In this document: piece by piece, positions 24,128 through 61,958 of the stretch | Layout: each line of letters begins with the position of its first letter | Numbering within the stretch: position 1 is the stretch's first letter | Assembly (NCBI GenBank): GCA_001643675.2 | Contig: LSRY02000034.1 | Coordinates: forward strand, 1,031,895-1,095,894 | Length of the DNA: 64,000 nucleotides | DNA from: Monocercomonoides exilis PA203 | Taxonomy: Eukaryota; Protista; Preaxostyla | Direction of reading: 5' to 3' | Notes under the pieces: model-generated | What the model was told of the DNA's origin: nothing | Database searches by the model: none | Seen by the model: the letters and a program-made list of their open reading frames with translations, nothing else | Made by a program: the position numbers and the translations under genes

Positions 24128-27100
24128 TTATCCTTTCTTTTCTATATTTGGCAGAATTGATTGTTCCATCAATCCTTCTTTTGTTGCGGTTATTTGAACG
24201 TTTTGCTCGCGATCTTGAATGCCATCAAGACGCTGTTTAAGTTCTGAGAAAGACATATTTGGCTCTTTCTGCAGAATTTCAATCATATGCTTTGAAAGCC
24301 ATCCTGTTTTTGTTCCATCACCAAACGAAAGTTGTTTAGCTGATTGATCAGCAGCAGAAGCGCCAATGTGAATGGCATTGGGTAGCTGCTTGTCTCTCCG
24401 CACATTTCTAAACTTTACCATTTTATCAAGATTGAACAACGAGCCTGCATGGCAGCACTCAGAGATTAGTACGATTCGGGTGTTTATTGAAGCTTTGTTG
24501 AGAATGAGATCGAACAAACACCAATCAATCACCATTCCTGAAAACACACCTCGTGCTGTTGATTGAAAAGGAAAATAATCGGAGAAGAGAGACGAGGGCA
24601 AAAAAATATCTGCTTGTGAAGATGAAGCACTCAATGCAGTCTTGTTTGCATCAGTCATTTCAGTTGTGTTCAATTGAGCTTGCTCTTCTTTTTTTGGAAA
24701 TGAATAAAATGAACTCTTTCCGCTTTCACTTAAGCCTGTTGGATCGGAAATTTCCCCTCCATGTCCAGAAAAGTATTGAACAAATTCACTTCCAGAATGA
24801 TCAATAAGATATTCCATCCACCGATAATACTCAGCTGCCGAACAGTCACATGTATAAAAGATTACAAATTCCCTCTTTTTTAACAATTCGGCAATTAATA
24901 TTCCATTAGTTAGGGGACCAATTCCCAAACTATTCGATTGTCCTTCGTCAGGGTTGAGAAACAAAACAGCTAAACGATTAAAACGAAAATTTTTTGGAAG
25001 TTGTGCTTCGCAAATGCGCATCAGATTGATACATCCCAAAGAATCCAAACGCTCGAGGTATTTTGAATGCTCAGTGAAAGAATAATCAAAAGGACTTTTT
25101 TGTAATTCGAGTAAATTTGCCCATTGATTTTGTTGTTGTTCTCTTTCAATTTGTGGAAATGATGCAATCATTGTCTGAGAGTTGCTTTGGGAAAAACATT
25201 GTGTGGAAATGAGAGGCTTTGCAGATGGTGAGGAGTTTTGAGAGAAATTACTGCTATGCATTTTCATTGATGTTGCACTTGCATCTGAAGCAGCAGAACC
25301 TAAAACTATTTTGCAAAGTTGACTGGTTAAATCACTGAGCTGAATTTCTCTCTCTTCTTCTCCAAGACATCTAATGACTGGGGCCTTTAGTAATGCTGAG
25401 TTTGTTGTGGTTATTTGCGGATGCACCGAATCTTTCAAAGGCCGATTCAATAATTGCAAGATATCTTTCCATTGAATATCAACGCATTTATCAAGAATTG
25501 ACACAAAACTGAAAAAAAATGAATCAAAATATTCTTCATTCGAAAAACTCTTCATGGACAATCCTTCTTCAGATGAACAAGCACTGATATGGATGGCATT
25601 CCAATTCGTTGCTCTTTCAATCATCAGCATCTCATCATTTTCATATTCCCTGCTCAATCCATCCTTTGAAAACTTTTCTCCTTCTTCAAGAAGAAATACA
25701 TCGCCAGCATAAGAAGCTAGAGTTACAAGAACAATTCGTACACCAGCGCAATGTGGGTTCTTTTTAAACAGCTTGTGCAGAACATCCTCGGGGAGATAAT
25801 CTTCTCTATTTCCAAGAAGAGGCTTTCTCATCCCTTTCCCAAAGAAAGTTGTTGTTGTTGTAGTATCAAGCCCAGCTTGAATAGCTTCCTTTTTCCATTT
25901 ATCTTTTTCTTCTTCAGGCATGAAGCAAAGGGCTTTCTTTTTCTTTTTTTCTTTATTGTTCGTAGTTATTGCAACAACTTCTCCAATAAAAATTGATGCC
26001 AATTCTTTTTTAACAGTTCGTAGAAGCCATTCCATCCAGTGATAATACTCTGTTGCAGTTGGATTCACAAAATAAAGCACTCGATATCCCCGCTTTTGAT
26101 AAAGCCGTGCAGTTTGAAGCGCTTGATTCATTCTCTCTTTAAACCATGTTTCCGGAGAAACCACACGTTTTTCAGATTCCTGTGGTGCTGCTTGTGGAGA
26201 TGAGTTCGAAGCAGTAGTTGATGCTGAAGAAGAATTCGATGCGGAAGAAGACTTGTTGAAAAAATCACGAAATTTAGACATATCATTCGTGGCAGCTGCT
26301 GGCACAACAAGGAAAATTGCACAAACATATCTGAGTGAAATTGATGGGAATGTTTTTGGAGTTATACGATCGAGATTGAAGAAGCCTTCTGAATCAAGTC
26401 GCTGCAAAAACGGATTCAACACAGTAAAATATTTCACAGGCTTCTTCATTTCGAATGAAAACTTTATTAAGCGAGAAAATTGTTCGTTGGAAGTGTCAGG
26501 AGAAGAGAATGAAGCATGACGAATGTGAAGTTGTTCTATATCGTTAAAGTCGTCATACACGTCGTTTTCTTCTTCTTCAGGAGAAGTTTGTTTCGGAGAA
26601 CCCATCAAATTCAAATAAAACTTGTTTGTGATATCGCTAAGTTGAAGCTCCCTTTGAGATTTTGAGAGTTGGCAAACGACCCTTCCCTCAAGCAATCCAT
26701 CAGCGGTTGCTGACAATTGCGGGTGCTGATCGGGTGGAATTAGTGGCTGCAGCGAACATAACAGCTGTTTATAATTGAGTTCCATATTTGCATCAAGCAG
26801 TTCAACAAATTTCAAAGAAAATGAATCAATAGAAGAATCTTTGGTTATCATCAAGTTGATTTTTTCTCCAACATTGCAAGAGCCAATGTGAATAATTTTT
26901 GGAATTTGTTTGAGAGATTTATTCGAAAGTACTTCACAGTTATGTTGATCGACTATTGCTGGTTTTGTTGAAATTTGTCTAAGATTATAAATATCACCAC
27001 TAGATGGTGCAGAAGTAATAAAAGTCAGCTTAGCAACTGAGTTTCTTGAATTTTTCGTAACAAGATGATGCAAAAATCCTTCTGTAATATTATTATTAAT

Positions 27101-30100
27101 TCCAGTAACTTTTGTCCTTATTCCTTTTCCATACGGAACAGCTGCTGAAATTTGTGACGCACATTTCCCGTATTTTTTCTTCAGTGCTGCCAGCCACTCA
27201 TCCTTCACGCTCTCCTCCACAAAGCATAATCCACTTGACGTATTTGACGAGCGTAGTGTATATCCTCCTGATACATTAGTTACTGTCCCACAATAAATGC
27301 AAACAAGATCTGTCTGAACAGCATTCATCAGCCACTTGACCCAGCTGAGATATTCCGTTGCTGTGGGATGCATTGAATATAAAACACGATATCCTCTTTT
27401 GACGAAGAATTCAGCCAACAAAAGCCCACTTCCAACAGAATATGAATTCTCTAACAGTGAAGTCGATGCTGAAGAAGAAGAAGAGGAGGAAGAGGGAGAA
27501 TCTGCTTGGTGATCCGAAATATTCTTTGTTGATGGAACCATAAAAATTGCACAAACATAACGAAAAGAAAGCAGTGGAAATGTTTTTGGTGTAATTCTGT
27601 CAAGGTTTATACATCCCATTTTATCTAACTCTCTTTCTTGTTCAGCGCAAATGGAGTCATAATCAACCGTCTGACTCATCTTCAATGCAAAGTCTATGAA
27701 TTGCCGCTTGCGCTCGTCTGTGTTATCTTGCAATGCAAATTGCTTTGCTTGAAGCTCGAAGATATCATCATCATCTTTTTCTTCCTCCTCCTCTTCTTCT
27801 TCAATACCTCCCACTAATTCAACAGATCCAACAGATCTTTCGCATTTATTAGACGATGGCTTTGGGCAGCCAAGCACTTTCATATGTAAATCATTTGTAA
27901 TTTCTGTTGCTTGCAGTTCTCTTTCTTTCTTAGAAAGAAGAGGAAGCACAGGTAATTCTTCAAGAATGCAATTTGTTGAAGTAATCTCTGCATGCTGTGA
28001 GTTCCCCAGCAGCAGCTGGATGTGCGAAGCCATTTCTTTCCAGTCAATCAGCGGGTCAATTTCCAGAAGAGATAAAAAGTGTTTAGTGAAAGAATCTTCT
28101 TTTCCTCCATCAGGCTTAAAACTAACGTAGCGCGACTCATCTGCTCTACACGATGCAATATGAATAATGTTTGGTCTCGAAAAATTTGAGTCACTTGAAG
28201 ATCTTTCGCTCAAAGATGACAAATGACCATCTCCAGAGAATTGAACCAAAGGACGAGACGTTGTTTTGTCTTTAGAATCGTCTGAAGCAGCAGATGCACT
28301 GACGCTCTCATCAATCTGCGACAATCCAAAAATATCACCCACGAAAGACGAGCAAGTAATTAACACCACGCGCAATCCTGGTCTGGGCTTATTCTTCATT
28401 AAAAGCTCACGCAAGTTGCGCGTGCGGATGTAATCGCGGCAGCCGATGCTCTCCACCTGCTTCCTCATTCCCTCTCCCTTCAGTTCAGAAACTATTCCTA
28501 TTTCTCTCCTTTCACTTCTCATTCGATTTATCCATCTGTCTTTTTCCTTCTCTTCCATAAAACTCAATGCCATTTCTTTATGATCTGAAGTATTCGTATC
28601 AGCAGATGCAGAGCCCGGCTGCGACGAAGATGGCTTCTTTGAATTGTGAACACAATAGACAGCAATACCAACGTAGACAGAAACAAAGTCAACTTGCACA
28701 TTCTGAAGAAGCCATTCCATCCAGTGATAATATTCTGTTGTCGTGGGGTCTGCAAAATATCCAACACGATAGCCTCTCCCGACAAAAAGCTTTGCATAAC
28801 TCATTCCTTGTTCCATTGCTGCATTCCCCGTCTTCTTCATCTTGTTTTTTTCTTCCGCATCGACAGACTTTCCATCCGAATCGGTTGCATCATCTGGGTC
28901 AAGATGGTGTCGGGATGTGACAATAAACACAGCTGCAAAGTTTCCAAGACGGAACGAAGAGAAAGCATCTAAAGAAAACCTGTTGAGGTTTATGCAGCCC
29001 ATTCTGTCAAGCTGAACCATGTATTTTGCATAAGGAGATGGATAATCAAAGGATTGTTGCATTTCTAACAGAAAGGAGATTTCTCGTTTCAGTTCCTCTT
29101 TTCGTTGTACTGAAAAAGATTCAAGAATGTTTTGCGTTTTTTGTTCACTTTTCTGCTTCTTTTTTTCTTTGTGCAAGCTTTCCTCTTCATTCGCATGACT
29201 TTTTTCAATCGTATTTGTGGAAGAATGCTTTTCGGGTATTTTTTCGTCCAATGTTGGATTTCGATTTGGTTGCCCCTTTCCAGATATTTCTGCAAATATG
29301 GCTCTATTTTTCTCTCTCAGCTTGTCTATTTCACTTGCATTTCCCCCGCTTTTGTCTCTTTCCATCGAATTTAACTCTTTTTCTTTTGATTTCTTGCTAT
29401 TTTGTATTCTCTTTTCATCTTTTGTTTCATTGTTTGTTTTCCTTTCTCCTTTAAATTGCTCTGCTTCTTTTCTTTCATCCATGTCTCTTTCTTTTTTCTC
29501 TTTTTTCTTGCTGTCACTCAAGTTTGAAAGATAAATTTGAAGATCTCCACCAACTTTAGGTTTTTTTGAATCAACTAAAATGCTACTATGCTGCTCTTTG
29601 TTTTCTTCATTACTTTCTTTTTTATCTTCTTCCTTCGGTTTTTGTGAAAAATCCCCGCTATCACTTTTTCCTTTATCTAAATTTTCTTTCCTTCTTCGGA
29701 ATCTTTCCCGATTTGTGTAAAGTTCATATGTCACATCATCATCTGAATCAGGTTTTGCGGGATTATTATCAACATTTTGATCATTGTTACGCTTATTTTC
29801 CTTTTTGCATTCACCAAAAGTTCCGCCTTTGTTCCCAATCTGACTTCTTGCTCTTTCATCTTTCCCTGTTTTGTTCTGTTTGTCTTCCCTCTTCAATTCG
29901 CATGAAGAAGATGCTTTTGTTGCTTCTGGAGCATCCGAAGATTCTTTTCTCAGCCATTTTGCTTGGCATCCGTTGAAGTGCACATCAAATAATTTCTTTG
30001 AGAAGAATTTTGTGTTGCACATGCAGCAGAGCAGATGAGTCTTATCGGAAACTGGTTTTTCTTCTGTCAGCTGCACTTTTCTTTTTGTGCTTTCCTGATT

Positions 30101-30980
30101 CCTTTCACGTTGTTTATCTTTCCTTTGGCTGCTGCATTCATCGTGTTCATCGTTTGACAATGGAAGTACTGATTTGCTCGGAACAGACCGCAAGCTGTTT
30201 AGAGAAACATCTTGCTTCACTGTAACTTCATGAGCAGATGGCAAAGTTGGAAACGGAAAGGAAGGTGAAGGTGATGATGAGTGAGACGAGTTAGAAGAAG
30301 ATGGAGAAGGCAGTGCTTGATTCTCCGTACGAGGAATACGTGTGCGAGCATGATGTTTTTGCTGAGTTTCAGTGTCTGCATTTGGAATTTGAGAAGTTTT
30401 TGTTGTTTCAACAGTAGTCTTTGTTGGAATGTGATTAGCAATGTCTGCAGAAGATGTTGTTGGCTGAGGGGAACGTGGTGTTCTATTGGCTGGAGTGCGA
30501 AGGCCTTGTTGAATGCGATTTTCGCTTTCTCCTGTTTTTGCTCCTGTTTTAAAAGTTGCCTTTTCATCTGTGATTTCTCCACTGGTTTTTTCTGGCTTTT
30601 CGTGTTTCTCCTTCTTTGCTCCTTCTTTTCTCGCTGAAGGTCTGCTATCTATTTTATTCTCTGTCAGTCCACCATCGCAATCACTAGAGGATGTGCTATC
30701 CGTTGTATGCGTTTTTGAATACTCCTCTTTTGCCTCTGAAGTTGCTCGTCTCTTTTTAAGTGATGGTGCAGGAACCCTCAACTGTGGCGAATGCGAAGAC
30801 GAAGAAGAAGAAGAAGAAGAAGAAGAAGAGGAAGAGGAAGAAGAAGAGGAAGAAGAAGAGGAAGAAGATAAAGAAGAAGAAGAAGAAGAAGAAGAAGAAG
30901 AAGAAGAAGAAGAAGAAGAAGAAGAAGAAGAAGAAGAAGAAGAAGAAGAAGAAGAAGAAGAAGAAGAAGAAGAAGAAGAA

Positions 30981-31015
<35 letters not shown>

Positions 31016-32195
31016 CGATGATGATTCTGTATCATCTGAATGCACAGTATGCTCCAATGGAAATCTGAATGTTCTGAGCCTTTCGCTAAGCTGAGATAGT
31101 GTTGGCCGCTTTTTTGGATTCTTATTGCATTATCATGTTTTTTAACAATGAAAATTCAAGATCATAAAAAGTGAATTTCTGGTTATAATCCTCTAAAATG
31201 TTAAGAAGAATCAAACTTCTTCCAGAGCATCGATAAATAACTGCATCAGCGGTTCTGAAGGATCTGTAATATCATTTTTACTGAAATTTTTCATCGATTC
31301 TCTAACTGCATCTGAATTAATTCCTGTAAAAATGGGTTTTTTCAAATGAGCATAGAATATCAGTGAACCTAATGAAAACACATCGCTTGCGATTGTTGGC
31401 CTTTCATTTAAACAAATATACATCAAGATATTTTTTGTTAAAACATTCAAACCTACAACCATCAATTATCTCGGGAGCAATGAATGAGAATGTAAAAAGC
31501 GATGAACGAAATGTTAGCAATAATGACGGAAAAAAGGATGCCAATCCAAAATCATCTTTTTTAAAAATAAATCGTCGGAATTTTAAAACAATTCAAACTT
31601 ATTTTCATATCCATGTTTTCATTGATAAAAACATTTTCAGGATGGAGTCTTCCATGCACGATACCACAGGAAGCAATGTAACTTAGTGCATCAATTGCTT
31701 GAATCGCAAATTTTAAGATGAACTGCAAAAAAATAAAATATTCAATTAAAATGAATTATCAAACTTTCGAAGAAATAAGTGTTGCAATTTCAGGGTTATT
31801 TATTGCTGCGAAAAGCGAAGTATCTCCTTGATCTTCTGTTAATGCGTGACACATACGCGCAGTAATTATGCACCGTGTATAACGAACAATTCCCTTGTTA
31901 TGATAGTGAGTCAGATTTAAAAATTGAGATTTGTTATCCTTGTCTAAATTTATAGTTTCATGTTTTATTCGTTTCCAAATAGATATTTCGCCTGTTTTCG
32001 TATATCTCACTCTTGAAGAAGAACCAAGAGCTCCTTTTTTGAGAGAATTTACAACCTCATCTGAAAAAAAAGTAATTTTAATTTAAAAATATATTAACTT
32101 CATAACCATAAATAAGAAAGATTATTTATACAATAACTTTCAGATTTTTTTTCTGGTGAATCCGTTTTAGCAACTTCACTCATGATCGTGCCCAT
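24128..32195 (-). CDS. Pseudokinase - poly-Ser - Zn-finger - 3 pseudo-metacaspase - metacaspase fusion protein (~2585 aa); exons 32195-32138 (or 32132), 32060-31765, 31722-31599, 31555-31453, 31400-31217, 31120-24128
   Basis: Five short GT-AG introns keep the frame and join kinase subdomains (KGALG, SIWKRI, IVHGRLHPENVF, DFGLA, FIAPE, SDVFSLG, NPKKRPT) to the 2309-aa ORF. The C-terminal domain has YFSGHGG and ISECCHAG (caspase-fold His/Cys dyad). Confidence 0.8.
30796..31026. repeat. (GAA)n/(GAT)n microsatellite encoding a poly-Ser linker of ~75 residues on the minus strand
   Basis: Read directly from the sequence. Confidence 0.9.
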
Positions 32196-33074
32196 TTTTA
32201 AAAATTTTTCTTATTTAAAAAAATCAGACCTTTTTCGTCTTTGTCTATGATATATGCAAAGAACAAGTGATTGTAAATTGGGAAGTATTTATTTAATTTT
32301 ATTGAATCAAATATGAATATACTCAATCGGAATCTTGATTTCTTAAAAATTTTGTTATATGGGGCAAAATATTTTTTTTCCGACTTTTGTTCCACCTGTT
32401 ATATATTAAATTGTTTTCCATTCATTTCCAAAATAACAATAATATAATTTCTTTGGAATGAATTTCAACAACAAAATTTTAAAAGCTAAATAATAATAAA
32501 TCATCCTGGAAAACTGATTCAGGACCAAGTTCCTGCAAGTTTTCCACAATTTGAAGAACAAATTTCATAGAAAACAGGATCGAATCAGTCTAGCCCTTAA
32601 TCATTGAATAAAATGATATCATTGGGTGAGCAATAATTTACGGCAATTTATTTGTAAATATTTATTTTATTTTATGTTTTTTTCTGCATCATTTTCAATT
32701 TATTTGTCAAATATAATTTTTTAATTATTTATCACAATTATGTCATTTTCAATTGAATCCATTGAAACAGAAAAAAAGAAAGCATTCCTTCAAACGTTTG
32801 TTCATCTTCGCTGTTTCCTTCTTTTGTGCCAATTGAATTACAAGAAATATAAAAATAATTAAAACAATAAGAATAATAAAAATTATTTGGGAAAGAATTG
32901 TCAAAAGGTGAATTATCGTTCGAATAACATTCCTGAGACAAACCTGAGCAACTGTCAGAGCCGCGCATATTAGAAAATGAATCAGAAAATACATTTTCAT
33001 TTTTTATATTAGATAAAGATTTATTATTTGAGTATTTTTCTATTAGCTTAACTGTATTTTCAATCCTATTTTTT

Positions 33075-57617: not shown

Positions 57618-60325
57618 TTATTTTTCATCATCATAATTTATTTCAATTTTTCTTTCTTTTGTATTTCTTTTTTTCATTTCTTTTTTCAAACTAATTTTTT
57701 CCTCAATTTCTACAGTTTCTTCATCATCAGAATCTTCAGAATCATCATCTTCATCAGAGTCATTATCATCTTTCAAAATCGTCTTTCTTCTCTTCATCTT
57801 TTTCTTTGTCATGTTATCATCCTTCCAATTTTCGATAACCCCCAAATTTCTTAGTCGATCTCTGCAATCACGAGGCAACCTCCCAGGCAACTCAGCAGCC
57901 ATCTCAACTAACCTTTTCTTTTCAAAGTTCATCTCAAGCAATTTTGTATCTTCTTCATCAGTCCAAGGTATTCTCTTTCTATGACCCTTATCATCAACCT
58001 CCCTGTGCAAAGAGTGCTCGTAGGGGCAAGGTTTCTTTCTGTTGTATTTCTTCATTTCTTTCGATCCATCCATCTCATCTTCAACAAACCTAAGTAATTC
58101 ATTTACAATATCCTCAACATTTTCACCCTTTTCATAGACTCTTTCATTGACATGGCGAATTCCAACATCAACACGAGCATTTGCTACTGTTGAATAGCGA
58201 GTATGTGGATTGTTATAGTTTTTATGTTTTGCATAAATCTCACTTGCTTCCTTTTCCAACTCCTCTTCACTCACAACATATCGAGTCAAAGCATTCTTCC
58301 AAGCTCTTTGTTTATATTTCCTTCTCTTCTCTTTCGTTTTTCCCTCTGAAGTTGAAGTCACTCTCTCTACGTTGATCCTATCTTTGAAGGCTTTGCGAAC
58401 CAACTGAATTGCCGTTCTCTCACAGATGTTATGCTCGATTTCATTGTTGAAGTTGATGTTGTGAAATGTCTCAGGGTTGACAAGAGACATGTCGATGACT
58501 TCATTCTCAATTTTCGTTTTGATGATGCGAGAGGAAACAATAGAGGCAGTGATGGCAGGTTTTGCATATCTGTTCTGAACCTTCGAATTTGGAACCCAGC
58601 CAGCAATGGCAGCAGTGTACATATATGCCGAATCCCTTGCATGAGCATCAACACCAGAAGCCAAAATCGCAGAACACATAAATCCACTTCTGAATGAATG
58701 GAAGGAGAAGAGATCGTGTGGGTACCCAGCAGCTTGAGCACGACGACGAAGACGTTGTGACATAGCATCCCGTGTTAAATTCCACAACTTTCGTTTTTCA
58801 TCTCATCAGATAAAACCCAAGAATTGCGCTCATGAAGATCCAAGTTGAACTCATTAATGAGATGTTGATTGATCCAGTACAACACATTCAGATTGTCCCT
58901 CTCATCCAAAGTGCCTTCCACTGATACTGTATGATTCCAATTCTGGTTGCCTTTTGTAACTCTGAATGTAATTTTGAGTATCTGAGTTTCACCAGACTCA
59001 GAGGTTATCAATGCTCCAATATCACCAATCAATACATTTGAAACAGTTACAGCCCTTGCACCAGTGTTGATTGCCACTAACCATAAAGATGCTTCCATTG
59101 CCTTCGTTGGTGACTGATCATTTGTTTTGTCGATAATCCTTTCCACATCAGATAAAATGCAAGGTTCCTTTCCTTTTCCGTCCTTCTTGGTATTCCTGTC
59201 GTTCTTTCCTTCTCTGAGAACCTGAGCGATTGACTGTTCAGCTTCATTGGATATGGGAATACCAGTTCTTATTATCTGTATTCTTTTGAGTGAGCAAGCG
59301 AAGACATTTTCAATTGAAGATCGAACATACAGACGAGATCGAAACAAGAACCGTAGAAAAGAAGAAGCATTTGTTTTATCGAGAGGATACATTGGAATAT
59401 TCCTCTTTTCGCAAAAAGTTGCATAAACTTGTTCCACATAGTCAGTCTTCCTCAAAGTGTTTTCTGCATATCCAGGTCCTGCCACATCGAATTGTTGGAG
59501 TTCCTCTTCAGTCATTGCCCTGATCAAATTCACAGCCCGGGATCGACTTGGGCTTGACTCAGATTGTTTTTCCTTGAGTGAGTTTTCGAATTCCAAGTCA
59601 CTCAGTGGGACAGTCAGTGTATCGGATTGAGATGATGACATTGAAGATATTGATTTGAGAAGAGGTGGGTGATTGTCCATTAGAAATGAATCCTCCTCTA
59701 ACCTTTCATTTTCAGATCTTTCTCTGTTCAGTTGAGTGAATGTTGGAATTTTGAAGGCAAGCTCAACAGATGAATCAGATGAATCAGTAAAATCAGAAGA
59801 ATCGGATGAGAGAGTTTCGAGAGAGAACCTTTGATTTTCAGATACCTTCTCATCTTCTTCTTCAATTTCAGACTCATCCACCACAACAACCTCTCTCAGT
59901 TTCTCCTCTTTCTTCTTTTTAAATAACCCAGAAATTCTTCCTTTCACTTCTCTCTTTCCTTTCTTTCTGTCCTTTTCATTCATTCCACCTCTCCCCTTCC
60001 TTTCTTTCTTCTTATCCTTATCCACAATTTCCATCTCCTTCCTCTCTTCCACTCCCTCAAAATTCTTTTCCTCTTCCTCAGAGATCCGTTTCCACAAGCT
60101 CTTCTTCGGAGGTGAGAACCAAAGATTTTCCACTTTTGTCGAAGATGAAGATGATGATGATGGCGATGATGGCGAAGATGAAGATTCACTTAAGACAGTC
60201 GAAGTCGAAGTAGAAGAAGCAGAAGCAGAAGAAGAAGAAGAAGAAGAAGAAGAAGAAGAAGAAGGACACCAAGAAGAAGAAACTGAAGCAGAAGGAGGGA
60301 GACCTGTTTCGGATAATTCCGGCAT
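57618..60325 (-). CDS. Tyrosine recombinase fused to a C-terminal Myb/SANT (telobox-like) domain; ~902 aa if the -1 frameshift near 58790 is resolved
   Basis: Catalytic set: R in NTGARAV (59054-59056), K in RVTKG (58952-58954), HxxR in FHSFRSG (58689-58700), W in IAGW (58596-58598), Y in QNRYA (58566-58568). DIRS-like core-binding region YAENTLRK...YATFCEKRNIPMYPL...FLRFL. Myb domain RKRIPWTDEED...PGR...DCRDRLRNL (57844-57980). Confidence 0.85.
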
Positions 60326-60685
60326 AGTCTTGTTCTCCTCTGAAAAAACACAGGAAAATCAACCCAAAAAAATCAAAAATTTAGCAGAGTTTTCCCAAGG
60401 AGGTAACAAATCAACAGAAAAAAGAACCGAAAAAAACAAAAATTTGAGCATAGTCATCCCAAGAAGAGAATAAAAATGAAAAAAAACAACCAAAAAATAT
60501 CAAAAATTCAGCATAGTCATTCCAAAGAGTGAAAAAATCAATAAAAAAACAGACAAAAAATGAGAAAAATCCGGCATAGTATTGTTTGAAAATAGAAAGA
60601 ATATGATTAATTTGAATGAAAATAAAAAATAAAAAATGACAAACCCTTTGGAAGAACCGATGAAAATTTTGGCATAGTCCTGTTA
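60313..60685. repeat. Six-copy subterminal direct repeat AATTyyrGCATAGTC, mostly at ~63-bp spacing
   Basis: GCA(T/G)AGT cores at 60322, 60384, 60448, 60511, 60574 and 60672. Confidence 0.8.
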
Positions 60686-60782
60686 AAAGTTTTAGGACTA
60701 TTCTTGTGTGGGACAAAAACAAATTCCGATTTCGAATTAAACATTCAAGAAGAGATGTTCACTTGACAAGTTTATAAAAAAC

Positions 60783-61917
60783 TAGGTTAGGGTTAAGGGT
60801 TAGGTTAGGTTAGGGTTAGGGTTAGGGTTAGGGTTAGGGTTAGGGTTAGGGTTAGGGTTAGGGTTAGGGTTAGGGTTAGGGTTAGGGTTAGGGTTAGGGT
60901 TAGGGTTAGGGTTAGGGTTAGGGTTAGGTTAGGTTAGGGTTAGGGTTAGGGTTAGGGTTAGGGTTAGGGTTAGGGTTAGGGTTAGGGTTAGGGTTAGGGT
61001 TAGGGTTAGGGTTAGGGTTAGGGTTAGGGTTAGGGTTAGGGTTAGGGTTAGGGTTAGGTTAGGTTAGGGTTAGGGTTAGGGTTAGGGTTAGGGTTAGGGT
61101 TAGGGTTAGGGTTAGGGTTAGGTTAGGGTTAGGTTAGGGTTAGGGTTAGGGTTAGGGTTAGGGTTAGGGTTAGGGTTCAAACTAGGTTAGGGGTTAGGGT
61201 TAGGGTTAGGTTAGGGTTAGGGTTAGGGTTAGGGTTAGGGTTAGGGTTAGGGTTAGGGTTAGGGTTAGGGTTAGGGTTAGGTTAGGGTTAGGGTTAGGGT
61301 TAGGGTTAGGGTTAGGGTTAGGGTTAGGGTTAGGGTTAGGGTTAGGGTTAGGGTTAGGGTTAGGGTTAGGGTTAGGGTTAGGGTTAGGGTTAGGGTTAGG
61401 GTTAGGGTTAGGGTTAGGGTTAGGGTTAGGGTTAGGGTTAGGGTTAGGGTTAGGGTTAGGGTTAGGGTTAGGGTTAGGGTTAGGGTTAGGGTTAGGGTTA
61501 GGTTAGGGTTAGGTTAGGGTTAGGGTTAGGGTTAGGGTTAGGGTTAGGGTTAGGGTTAGGGGTTAGGGTTAGGGTTAGGGTTAGGGTTAGGGTTAGGTTC
61601 AAACTAGGTTAGGGTTAGGGTTAGGGTTAGGGTTAGGGTTAGGGTTAGGGTTAGGGTTAGGGTTAGGTTAGGGTTAGGTTAGGGTTAGGGTTAGGGTTAG
61701 GGTTAGGGTTAGGGTTAGGGTTAGGGTTAGGGTTAGGTTAGGGTTAGGGTTAGGGTTAGGTTAGGTTAGGGTTAGGGTTAGGGTTAGGGTTAGGTTAGGG
61801 TTAGGGTTAGGGTTAGGGTTAGGGTTAGGGTTAGGGTTAGGGTTAGGGTTAGGGTTAGGGTTAGGTTAGGGTTAGGTTAGGGTTAGGGTTAGGTTAGGGT
61901 TAGGGTTAGGGTTAGGG

Positions 61918-61958
<41 letters not shown>

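What the first reader, a model, noticed from the sequence alone, without database searches (positions are those of the whole stretch)
24128..32195. Pseudokinase-metacaspase fusion not visible in the ORF track
Seen: five small upstream exons splice in frame onto the 2309-aa ORF and add a kinase fold. Its catalytic loop reads HGRLHPEN instead of HRDLKPEN (catalytic Asp lost), while DFG and APE are intact. It is followed by poly-Ser, a C-x2-C...H...C Zn-finger-like motif (~29950-30030) and four caspase-fold units. Known: pseudokinases (MLKL) and pseudo-caspases (cFLIP) are switches in cell-death signalling. Inference: a one-chain sensor-protease signalling module, notable if the host is the mitochondrion-lacking Monocercomonoides.
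Basis: partly seen in the sequence, partly recalled or inferred. Interest (0 to 1): 0.8.

Follow-up and report, generated by a model that had tools for sequence, protein, structure and literature searches.

The report
Dead-kinase, four-metacaspase fusion gene
One spliced gene of the mitochondrion-less protist Monocercomonoides exilis joins a kinase that has lost its catalytic residue, a small zinc-finger motif, three dead metacaspase copies and one apparently working copy; oxymonad relatives share the layout, but its function is untested.

Summary
On the minus strand, 32195-24128, lies one six-exon gene of about 2585 aa. RNA contigs from four runs of one study join exons 2 to 6 exactly at the predicted GT..AG introns. 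Exon 1 and intron 1 are not covered by RNA.

The last kinase helix (NPKKRPT...) lies in the same open frame as the 2309-aa ORF, so the fusion is real. The public M. exilis annotation already holds it (P0001, 2499 aa), named only for its kinase domain.

The kinase matches Pfam Pkinase (105 bits). It has Arg for the catalytic Asp, His for the loop Lys and Gln for the alphaC Glu. The beta3 Lys, the loop Asn, DFG and APE are kept.

Four homologous metacaspase-fold units follow. Units 1-3 lack both His and Cys. Unit 4 keeps SGHG and CCHAG and passes the Peptidase_C14 threshold.

Kinase and all four units give dN/dS 0.27-0.43 against a 92%-identical paralogue. Another M. exilis paralogue and two Streblomastix-type proteins share dead kinase + dead unit + active unit. 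Sister paralogues carry C2 or EF-hand domains instead.

Most likely this is a regulated metacaspase with built-in pseudoenzyme regulators. That function is inferred, not shown.

This scan noted the same family before, on this stretch and on two paralogues. I found no paper describing it.

The parts
32138..32195 (-). Exon 1 with the start codon (MGTIMSEVAKTDSPEKKSE...). The public model P0001 uses a donor 6 nt further on, so its exon ends at 32132. Both donors are in frame.
   Evidence: Sequence and frames. P0001. 83% conserved in the C10 paralogue. Not covered by RNA contigs.
31765..32060 (-). Exon 2: kinase N-lobe. The Gly loop is degenerate (K-x-G-x-x-G), the beta3 Lys is kept, and the alphaC Glu is replaced by Gln.
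   Evidence: RNA contigs cover it and join it to exon 3. Alignment to CDK2.
31599..31722 (-). Exon 3: alphaE helix and catalytic loop HGRLHPEN (31633-31656). Asp is replaced by Arg and Lys by His; Asn is kept.
   Evidence: Pfam Pkinase profile positions 102-139, E 1.5e-4 for the exon alone. CDK2 alignment. RNA joints.
31453..31555 (-). Exon 4: DFG (31545-31553), activation segment and APE (31470-31478).
   Evidence: Pkinase profile positions 141-170. RNA joints. Coordinates.
31217..31400 (-). Exon 5: kinase C-lobe, subdomains IX-X.
   Evidence: Pkinase profile positions 177-211. RNA joints on both sides.
24128..31120 (-). Exon 6: the last kinase helix (NPKKRPTLSQL), the linker and four metacaspase-like units, ending at the stop codon. 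It contains the 2309-aa ORF of the ORF list.
   Evidence: Open frame of 2330 codons. RNA joint 31120|31217 in four runs. The RNA runs hold 0.81-0.88 of the sampled words of 24128-32400.
30782..31045 (-). Ser tract, (TCA)n(TCT)n, with its flanks. It is in frame, and the public model removes it as a 264-nt intron. The paralogue has only about 14 Ser/Thr here.
   Evidence: RNA contigs of runs X1 and X2 run 44 nt into it. Contigs of X3 and X4 run 324 nt past 31040 with 2-3 mismatches, so the status is unresolved.
29966..30028 (-). C2HC zinc-finger-like motif (C-x2-C-x12-H-x3-C) inside the low-complexity linker.
   Evidence: It is conserved in the C10 copy (1 change in 55 aa) and in the distant C29 paralogue (CC.C...F.....FD.HF..CQ..W). 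No Pfam match.
27911..29143 (-). Unit 1: metacaspase-fold pseudo-protease. The His site is Ile and the Cys site is Ser.
   Evidence: phmmer against unit 4, E 1e-12 and 1e-8. Alignments. dN/dS 0.43.
26651..27748 (-). Unit 2: pseudo-protease. The His site is Thr and the Cys site is Pro.
   Evidence: AlphaFold model with pTM 0.81. Foldseek best matches are metacaspase 9, GSU0716, TbMCA2 and Yca1, E 1e-8. dN/dS 0.35.
25361..26518 (-). Unit 3: pseudo-protease. The His site is Glu and the Cys site is Ser.
   Evidence: dN/dS 0.27.
24131..25168 (-). Unit 4: metacaspase with an intact dyad. His lies in FSGHGG (24761-24763) and Cys in ECCHAG (24452-24454).
   Evidence: Pfam Peptidase_C14, 24.6 bits against a cutoff of 21.4. 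Model with pTM 0.82. Foldseek matches metacaspases and MALT1, E 1e-9. The profile hits Yca1, CgMCA1 and TbMCA2. dN/dS 0.33.

Best explanation
Shown here:
- This is a single expressed gene of Monocercomonoides exilis.
- Its product reads, from N to C: a protein-kinase fold without the catalytic Asp; a Ser-rich disordered linker holding a conserved C2HC zinc-finger-like motif; three metacaspase-fold units that lack both catalytic residues; and one C-terminal metacaspase unit with an intact His-Cys dyad.
- The dead-kinase + dead-unit + live-unit layout is shared by an M. exilis paralogue (C29) and by Streblomastix-type proteins.
- The kinase and all four units evolve under purifying selection.

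Inferred:
- The protein is a regulated Arg/Lys-directed cysteine protease in which only unit 4 cuts.
- The dead units act as built-in partners or scaffolds for the live unit. Known analogies are separase's pseudo-protease domain, cFLIP with caspase-8, and TbMCA4 with TbMCA3.
- The pseudokinase is the input module, working by ligand, nucleotide or partner binding rather than phosphotransfer. It occupies the position that C2 and EF-hand calcium sensors hold in sister paralogues.
- The acidic cluster after the catalytic His is largely replaced in unit 4. This fits control by something other than calcium.
For: One gene:
- RNA contigs join exons 2-6 in four runs.
- Kinase subdomain XI lies in the same open frame as the units.
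- The public model P0001 has the same layout.

Kinase fold and lost residues:
- Pkinase 105 bits over profile positions 1-258.
- The exons match the profile colinearly.
- CDK2 alignment: D127 to R, K129 to H, E51 to Q, G11 to K. K33, N132 and D145 are kept.

Units:
- Internal repeats at E 1e-8 to 1e-12.
- Dyad table.
- Caspase fold for both a dead unit and the live unit.
- Peptidase_C14 above threshold for unit 4.
- The profile hits Yca1, CgMCA1 and TbMCA2.

Selection: dN/dS is 0.34 for the kinase, 0.27-0.43 for the units and 0.73 for the linker.

Conservation of the layout:
- In the unit tree, live units of C30, C10, C29 and Streblomastix P0007 form one clade (100/99). Their dead units form the sister clade (95/95).
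- The C29 kinase exons read HSNLHPGN.
- P0007 and P0018 read HLNLWPAN.
- Sister paralogues carry C2 or EF-hand + C2 instead.

Acidic cluster: unit 4 reads DPTGLSESGKSS where CgMCA1 reads DLDGDEEDGMDD.
Against: - No activity, binding or processing data exist for any part.
- Exon 1 and intron 1 have no RNA support.
- It is unresolved whether the Ser tract is translated or spliced out.
- The kinase keeps the beta3 Lys, the loop Asn and the DFG Asp. It may therefore bind ATP, and some kinases lacking canonical residues are still active.
- The kinases of M. exilis and Streblomastix are only 23% identical. This is no closer than to unrelated kinases, so one origin of the fusion is parsimonious but not proven.
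- Metacaspases are described as monomeric enzymes (abstract of PMC12914765). A caspase-style pairing of dead and live units is therefore an analogy, not an expectation.
- dN/dS was measured against a copy that carries one in-frame stop.
Confidence: 0.6

Rival explanations
1. The kinase domain is an atypical but active kinase. It would phosphorylate the Ser-rich linker or other proteins, so the protein would be a true kinase-protease bifunctional enzyme rather than a pseudokinase scaffold.
For: The beta3 Lys, the catalytic-loop Asn, the DFG Asp and APE are kept. The domain is under purifying selection, dN/dS 0.34. A long Ser/Thr-rich linker lies next to it.
Against: The catalytic base Asp is replaced in every family member seen: by Arg in C30 and C10, and by Asn in C29, P0007 and P0018. 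The loop Lys, the alphaC Glu and the first Gly of the Gly loop are also lost. The Ser run itself is not conserved.
Confidence: 0.15
2. The gene is a decaying product of lineage-specific duplication. The dead units and the dead kinase would be relics without a role, and only unit 4 (if anything) would matter.
For: Three of four units and the kinase lack catalytic residues. The sister copy on contig C10 has an in-frame TAG. The linker evolves almost neutrally, dN/dS 0.73. A microsatellite has expanded inside the coding frame.
Against: An open frame of 2330 codons in AT-rich DNA. It is transcribed and correctly spliced. dN/dS of the dead units (0.27-0.43) equals that of the live unit (0.33). The dead + live pairing and the dead kinase are kept between Monocercomonoides and Streblomastix.
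Confidence: 0.1
3. The kinase exons and the metacaspase ORF are two neighbouring genes wrongly joined.
For: The ORF list shows only the 2309-aa ORF. Contigs cannot prove one molecule across the Ser repeat.
Against: The RNA joint 31217|31120 places the last kinase helix in the same unbroken frame as the units. There is no stop or start signal between them. C10, C29 and Streblomastix have the same layout. The public model joins them.
Confidence: 0.03

Closest known systems
Type I metacaspases (yeast Yca1/Mca1, Candida glabrata MCA1, Trypanosoma brucei MCA2; MEROPS C14B)
   Same: Unit 4 has the caspase-hemoglobinase fold, the SGHG His and the (D/E)-C-C-H-x-G Cys, and there is no long p20-p10 linker. 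These proteins are the best sequence-profile and fold matches.
   Different: Four units lie in one chain and three of them are dead. Each unit has a family-specific helical extension of about 55 aa at its N-terminus. The acidic cluster after the His is largely replaced. An N-terminal pseudokinase stands in place of a Pro/Gln-rich or LSD1-zinc-finger prodomain.
Trypanosoma brucei MCA4, a pseudopeptidase processed by active MCA3 (PMC3220528)
   Same: A catalytically inactive metacaspase homologue works together with an active one.
   Different: In T. brucei these are two separate proteins, and the dead one has a single substitution at the Cys. Here the dead and live copies are fused, and the dead copies have lost both His and Cys.
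Separase (pseudo-protease domain plus active protease domain) and cFLIP with caspase-8. Cited from general knowledge, not tested here.
   Same: A dead caspase-fold module next to, or paired with, a live one acts as regulator or scaffold.
   Different: These are different clan CD families. There is no sequence relationship beyond the fold, and no evidence here that the units pack against each other.
Pseudokinases that lack the HRD Asp, such as MLKL (HGK loop). Cited from general knowledge.
   Same: The kinase fold is retained, the catalytic Asp is lost, and the context is linked to cell-fate signalling.
   Different: No specific sequence relationship: the best solved matches are CDK2, PLK2, NEK and Lck, all near 50 bits. 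DFG is kept here, whereas MLKL has GFE. No four-helix-bundle effector is present.
Oxymonad tandem metacaspases with C2 or EF-hand N-termini (M. exilis MONOS_11445 = P0002, Blattamonas P0003 and P0004, Streblomastix P0005, P0009)
   Same: The same family-specific unit in tandem. The C-terminal unit is usually live and the N-terminal unit is often dead.
   Different: They carry calcium- or membrane-binding domains instead of a pseudokinase, have two units rather than four, and keep more of the acidic cluster.

Membership tests
Metacaspase (Peptidase_C14, PF00656) | Pfam model matched above the gathering score | tested here: met
   Unit 4 scores 24.6 bits against a cutoff of 21.4. Units 1-3 give no Pfam match and join the family only through unit 4 and the profile.
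Metacaspase (Peptidase_C14, PF00656) | Caspase-hemoglobinase fold | tested here: met
   AlphaFold models of unit 4 (pTM 0.82) and dead unit 2 (pTM 0.81) match metacaspases, caspases and MALT1 at probability 1.00, E 1e-8 to 1e-9.
Metacaspase (Peptidase_C14, PF00656) | Catalytic His-Cys dyad in the SGHG and D-x-C-H-S-G motifs | tested here: met
   Met by unit 4 only (FSGHGG, ECCHAG). Not met by unit 1 (I, S), unit 2 (T, P) or unit 3 (E, S).
Metacaspase (Peptidase_C14, PF00656) | Acidic calcium-binding cluster after the catalytic His | tested here: inconclusive
   Unit 4 reads DPTGLSESGKSS where CgMCA1 reads DLDGDEEDGMDD in the profile alignment. Most acidic positions are replaced, but the liganding residues were not mapped on a structure.
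Metacaspase (Peptidase_C14, PF00656) | Cleavage after Arg/Lys, and autoprocessing | not testable with these tools
   Needs an enzyme assay. The acidic residue before the Cys pair is Glu instead of Asp.
Eukaryotic protein kinase (PF00069) | Pfam model matched above the gathering score over the whole domain | tested here: met
   P0001:1-300 scores 105.1 bits against a cutoff of 31.7, over profile positions 1-258 of 263. Exons 3, 4 and 5 match colinear profile segments.
Eukaryotic protein kinase (PF00069) | Catalytic Asp of the HRD motif | tested here: not met
   HGRLHPEN aligns with HRDLKPQN of CDK2, so Asp is replaced by Arg. The same loss is seen in C10, C29 (HSN), and P0007 and P0018 (HLN).
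Eukaryotic protein kinase (PF00069) | beta3 Lys, alphaC Glu, DFG Asp and Gly-rich loop | tested here: inconclusive
   Lys and the DFG Asp are kept. The alphaC Glu aligns with Gln, and the first Gly of the loop aligns with Lys. The N-lobe alignment is of low identity.
Pseudokinase (sequence definition: at least one of VAIK Lys, HRD Asp or DFG Asp missing) | Loss of a canonical catalytic residue in a retained kinase fold | tested here: met
   Lack of activity itself cannot be tested with these tools.
C2HC zinc finger (UBZ4-like or zf-C2HC type) | C-x2-C ... H-x3-C ligand pattern, conserved | tested here: met
   C-x2-C-x12-H-x3-C at 29966-30028. It is conserved in the C10 and C29 paralogues.
C2HC zinc finger (UBZ4-like or zf-C2HC type) | Match to a curated family model | tested here: not met
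   No Pfam family even at E up to 10. The family assignment is therefore only a resemblance recalled from memory.

The most novel reading that the evidence does not exclude
The protein is a self-contained, single-chain cell-fate switch in a eukaryote without mitochondria. The pseudokinase senses a ligand or partner. The three dead units, which carry a conserved Lys/Arg-rich helix where live units have the acidic loop, hold the live unit in check as built-in pseudo-substrates or pseudo-dimer partners. Release would unleash an Arg/Lys-specific protease. That would be a mitochondrion-independent route to regulated proteolysis or death, invented in oxymonads by swapping a calcium sensor for a pseudokinase.
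Probability: 0.15. Interest if true: 0.85.

Novelty: new variant of a known kind. Interest (0 to 1): 0.55.

Why it matters
Metacaspases are the main caspase relatives outside animals. How they are switched on is known mainly as calcium dependence and autoprocessing.

In this oxymonad family the input module has been exchanged: C2 or EF-hand domains in some members, a pseudokinase in others. Dead protease copies are also fused in front of the live one. That gives a natural experiment on how pseudoenzymes regulate their active cousins.

It also bears on whether regulated cell-death machinery persists after complete loss of mitochondria. A Pfam-based survey counted only two metacaspases in M. exilis (PMC7539657). 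At least five genes with twelve units are found here, most of them invisible to the Pfam model.

Tried and rejected
- Pfam on the whole 2309-aa ORF found no caspase domain. Only unit 4 scanned alone passes.
- Pfam on exon 2, on the linker and on the zinc-finger piece found nothing.
- The word-based protein search with the unit alignment found nothing at E 1e-5. The exhaustive profile search was therefore used.
- I first concluded that the C29 paralogue has no kinase.
- A common origin of the M. exilis and Streblomastix kinase domains could not be shown from pairwise scores.
- A literature search for kinase-metacaspase fusions or tandem metacaspases found no description.
Exons were searched one by one by reference. 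Joined analyses used only the database protein P0001 by its id.
Full report
**Observation**

The ORF list shows a 2309-aa ORF on the minus strand (24128-31057) and only small ORFs upstream. I read the minus strand of 30900-32500 in three frames and located the splice motifs. This gives six exons:
- exon 1: 32195-32138
- exon 2: 32060-31765
- exon 3: 31722-31599
- exon 4: 31555-31453
- exon 5: 31400-31217
- exon 6: 31120-24128

All introns are GT..AG, and introns 2-5 begin GTTTGA. The frames connect throughout, and the total is about 2585 codons.

Exon 6 opens with NPKKRPTLSQL. This is the last conserved helix of a kinase domain, and it runs without a stop into the 2309-aa ORF. The kinase and the long ORF therefore cannot be separate reading frames.

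**RNA evidence**

Four metatranscriptome runs of one study hold 0.81-0.88 of the sampled words of 24128-32400. I laid them on 31040-32400.
- Their contigs skip exactly 31121-31216, 31401-31452, 31556-31598 and 31723-31764, with CT..AC ends on the plus strand.
- In three runs a single contig joins exon 2 through exon 6. In the fourth run (X4) shorter contigs carry three of the four joints.
- All contigs stop at 32060, which is the intron-1 acceptor. Nothing covers 32061-32400, so exon 1 and intron 1 have no RNA support.
- All four runs come from one study and are contigs. They show presence and joints, not transcript ends or levels.

**Public annotation**

A region search with exon 6 returned one protein, P0001 (2499 aa), named "putative Protein kinase domain [Monocercomonoides exilis]". 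It is 100% identical over the scored region, and its precomputed Pfam hits are kinase families only.

Its sequence has the same exons as my model, with two differences:
- It uses an intron-1 donor 6 nt downstream (SESYY instead of SEN). Both donors are in frame.
- It removes 31045-30782, the Ser tract, as an intron.

So the fusion is already in the public gene set, but the metacaspase part is unnamed.

Exons were searched singly by reference, and joined analyses used P0001 by its id.

**Kinase**

- Exons 3, 4 and 5 match Pkinase profile positions 102-139, 141-170 and 177-211, in order.
- P0001:1-300 scores 105 bits over profile positions 1-258 of 263.
- The nearest solved kinases are CDK2, PLK2, NEK and Lck, all near 50-55 bits. 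No specific subfamily stands out.

| CDK2 position | State here |
|---|---|
| G11 (Gly loop) | replaced by Lys |
| K33 (beta3 Lys) | kept |
| E51 (alphaC Glu) | replaced by Gln |
| D127 (catalytic Asp) | replaced by Arg |
| K129 (loop Lys) | replaced by His |
| N132 (loop Asn) | kept |
| D145 (DFG Asp) | kept |
| APE | kept |

By the sequence definition this is a pseudokinase. Inactivity itself is not shown.

**Linker**

About 640 residues are rich in Ser, Lys and Glu (22% Ser). The Ser tract of about 78 residues corresponds to only about 14 Ser/Thr in the paralogue, so it is a recent microsatellite expansion.

Contigs of runs X1 and X2 run 44 nt into the repeat. Contigs of X3 and X4 continue 324 nt past 31040 with 2-3 mismatches. 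A spliced form would give 4 mismatches over the last 6 nt. Whether the tract is spliced out remains open.

Inside the linker, C-x2-C-x12-H-x3-C at 30028-29966 is almost unchanged in the C10 copy. It is also recognisable in the distant C29 paralogue as CC.C...F.....FD.HF..CQ..W. No Pfam model matches it. A UBZ4- or C2HC-type finger is only a resemblance from memory.

**Caspase-fold units**

- phmmer with unit 4 finds three further copies in the same protein, at E 1e-8 to 1e-12.
- Unit 4 alone passes Peptidase_C14 (24.6 bits against 21.4). Units 1-3 give no Pfam hit.
- A profile of 14 units hits Yca1, C. glabrata MCA1 and TbMCA2 among solved structures.
- AlphaFold models of unit 4 (pTM 0.82) and of dead unit 2 (pTM 0.81) match metacaspases, then caspases and MALT1, at probability 1.00.

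| Unit | His site | Cys site | State |
|---|---|---|---|
| 1 | Ile | Ser | dead |
| 2 | Thr | Pro | dead |
| 3 | Glu | Ser | dead |
| 4 | His (FSGHGG) | Cys (ECCHAG) | dyad intact |

The dead units have also lost the acidic residue before the Cys. In unit 4 the acidic cluster after the His is largely replaced: DPTGLSESGKSS against DLDGDEEDGMDD in CgMCA1.

**Family in the same genome**

| Locus | Content |
|---|---|
| C30 (this window) | dead kinase + 3 dead units + 1 live unit |
| C10 | 92%-identical copy, same exons, same HGRLHPEN, one in-frame TAG at the equivalent of window 26275 |
| C29 | dead unit + live unit, with kinase exons upstream (loop HSNLHPGN, DFG kept) |
| C26 | dead + live unit; its product P0002 (MONOS_11445) begins with a C2 domain |
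| C13 | two live units |

I had first missed the C29 kinase exons. In C29 the breaks between exon matches lie just before DFG and just after the APE-equivalent, about where the C30 introns lie (by eye).

**Selection**

| Region (window against the C10 copy) | dN/dS |
|---|---|
| Kinase | 0.34 |
| Unit 1 | 0.43 |
| Unit 2 | 0.35 |
| Unit 3 | 0.27 |
| Unit 4 | 0.33 |
| Linker | 0.73 |

The dead modules are as constrained as the live one. The caveat is that the C10 copy has a stop codon.

**Other organisms**

The exhaustive profile search gave 1207 hits. The top hits are two-unit proteins of Blattamonas nauphoetae, Streblomastix strix and unnamed assemblies.

Among the 150 listed hits, only P0001, P0007 (S. 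strix, partial, 1168 aa) and P0018 contain a kinase.
- P0007 is Pkinase (123 bits) + dead unit + live unit.
- Both P0007 and P0018 have the loop HLNLWPAN.
- P0009 has EF-hands + C2 in the same position.

In a maximum-likelihood tree of 30 units:
- The live units of C30, C10, C29 and P0007 form one clade (support 100/99).
- Their dead units form a second clade (95/95), within which C30 units 1-3 are a sub-clade next to C29 unit 1.
- These two clades group together (94/87), apart from the C2/EF-hand group.

So the dead + live pair predates the split of Monocercomonoides and Streblomastix. The window's gene later tripled its dead unit.

The kinase domains of the two genera are only 23% identical and no closer than to other kinases. 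A single fusion event is parsimonious but unproven.

Tandem Peptidase_C14 proteins without kinases also occur in a dinoflagellate, in MMETSP transcripts and in a fungus.

**Literature**

- One survey reports "two metacaspases" in M. exilis by PF00656 (PMC7539657).
- TbMCA4 is a described pseudopeptidase partner of an active metacaspase (PMC3220528).
- I found no paper describing tandem metacaspases or a kinase-metacaspase fusion. The library lacks most subscription journals.

**Mechanism**

Shown: one transcript, the domain order, which catalytic residues are present or lost, the folds, the constraint and the conservation of the layout.

Inferred:
- Unit 4 is the only protease.
- The dead units regulate or scaffold it.
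- The pseudokinase is an input module, replacing the calcium sensors of sister paralogues.
- The C2HC motif is a binding module.

Rivals are an atypical active kinase, relic domains without a role, and a mis-joined gene. The last is largely refuted.

**Verdict**

This is a new architectural variant of a known protease family. It is present in public data but undescribed, and its function is unknown. This scan has already noted the same stretch once and the C10 and C29 paralogues.

Noticed in passing
L013:2375-9097 (G000:C10:143874-150596) and L017: A 92%-identical paralogue with the same six-exon layout and the same HGRLHPEN. It has one in-frame TAG where the window has AAA at 26275, which splits it into open frames of 1525 and 678 codons. 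This could be a nonsense mutation, a small intron or an assembly error.
   Followed up: partly
window 32061-32400: RNA contigs of all four runs stop at 32060, plus 1-3 letters. Nothing covers exon 1 or intron 1. Two in-frame donors 6 nt apart (32137 and 32131) could make the assembly graph branch exactly there.
   Followed up: no
window 30782-31045: A coding (TCA)n(TCT)n tract of about 78 Ser. The public model removes it as an in-frame 264-nt intron. The paralogue has only about 14 Ser/Thr here. RNA contigs disagree between runs.
   Followed up: partly
L014:7282-7840 (G000:C29, upstream of the 1194-aa ORF): Kinase exons with the loop HSNLHPGN and an intact DFG. Six-frame searches at E 1e-5 had missed them. 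The same paralogue keeps the C2HC motif.
   Followed up: partly
each unit, first ~55 residues (for example window 25000-25168 in unit 4): A family-specific helical extension with the motif RW..F...M..P..Y.S...K.L..LD.MGCINL.RIT precedes the first strand of every unit. It is predicted with high confidence, its role is unknown, and Pfam has no model for it.
   Followed up: no
dead units, for example window unit 2 model residues 179-199: Dead units share a conserved Lys/Arg-rich helix (E..KD.W...) where live units have the acidic or disordered loop after the His.
   Followed up: no
P0056, P0069, P0095 and others: Proteins with two or three complete Peptidase_C14 domains occur in a dinoflagellate (Yihiella), in MMETSP transcripts and in the fungus Phlebia. 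Some have EF-hands. I found no description of such tandem metacaspases in the papers searched.
   Followed up: partly
window 60000-64000: Extreme GC skew (0.69 to 0.98) at the end of the window. This is consistent with the telomeric repeats noted by other readers of this scan.
   Followed up: no
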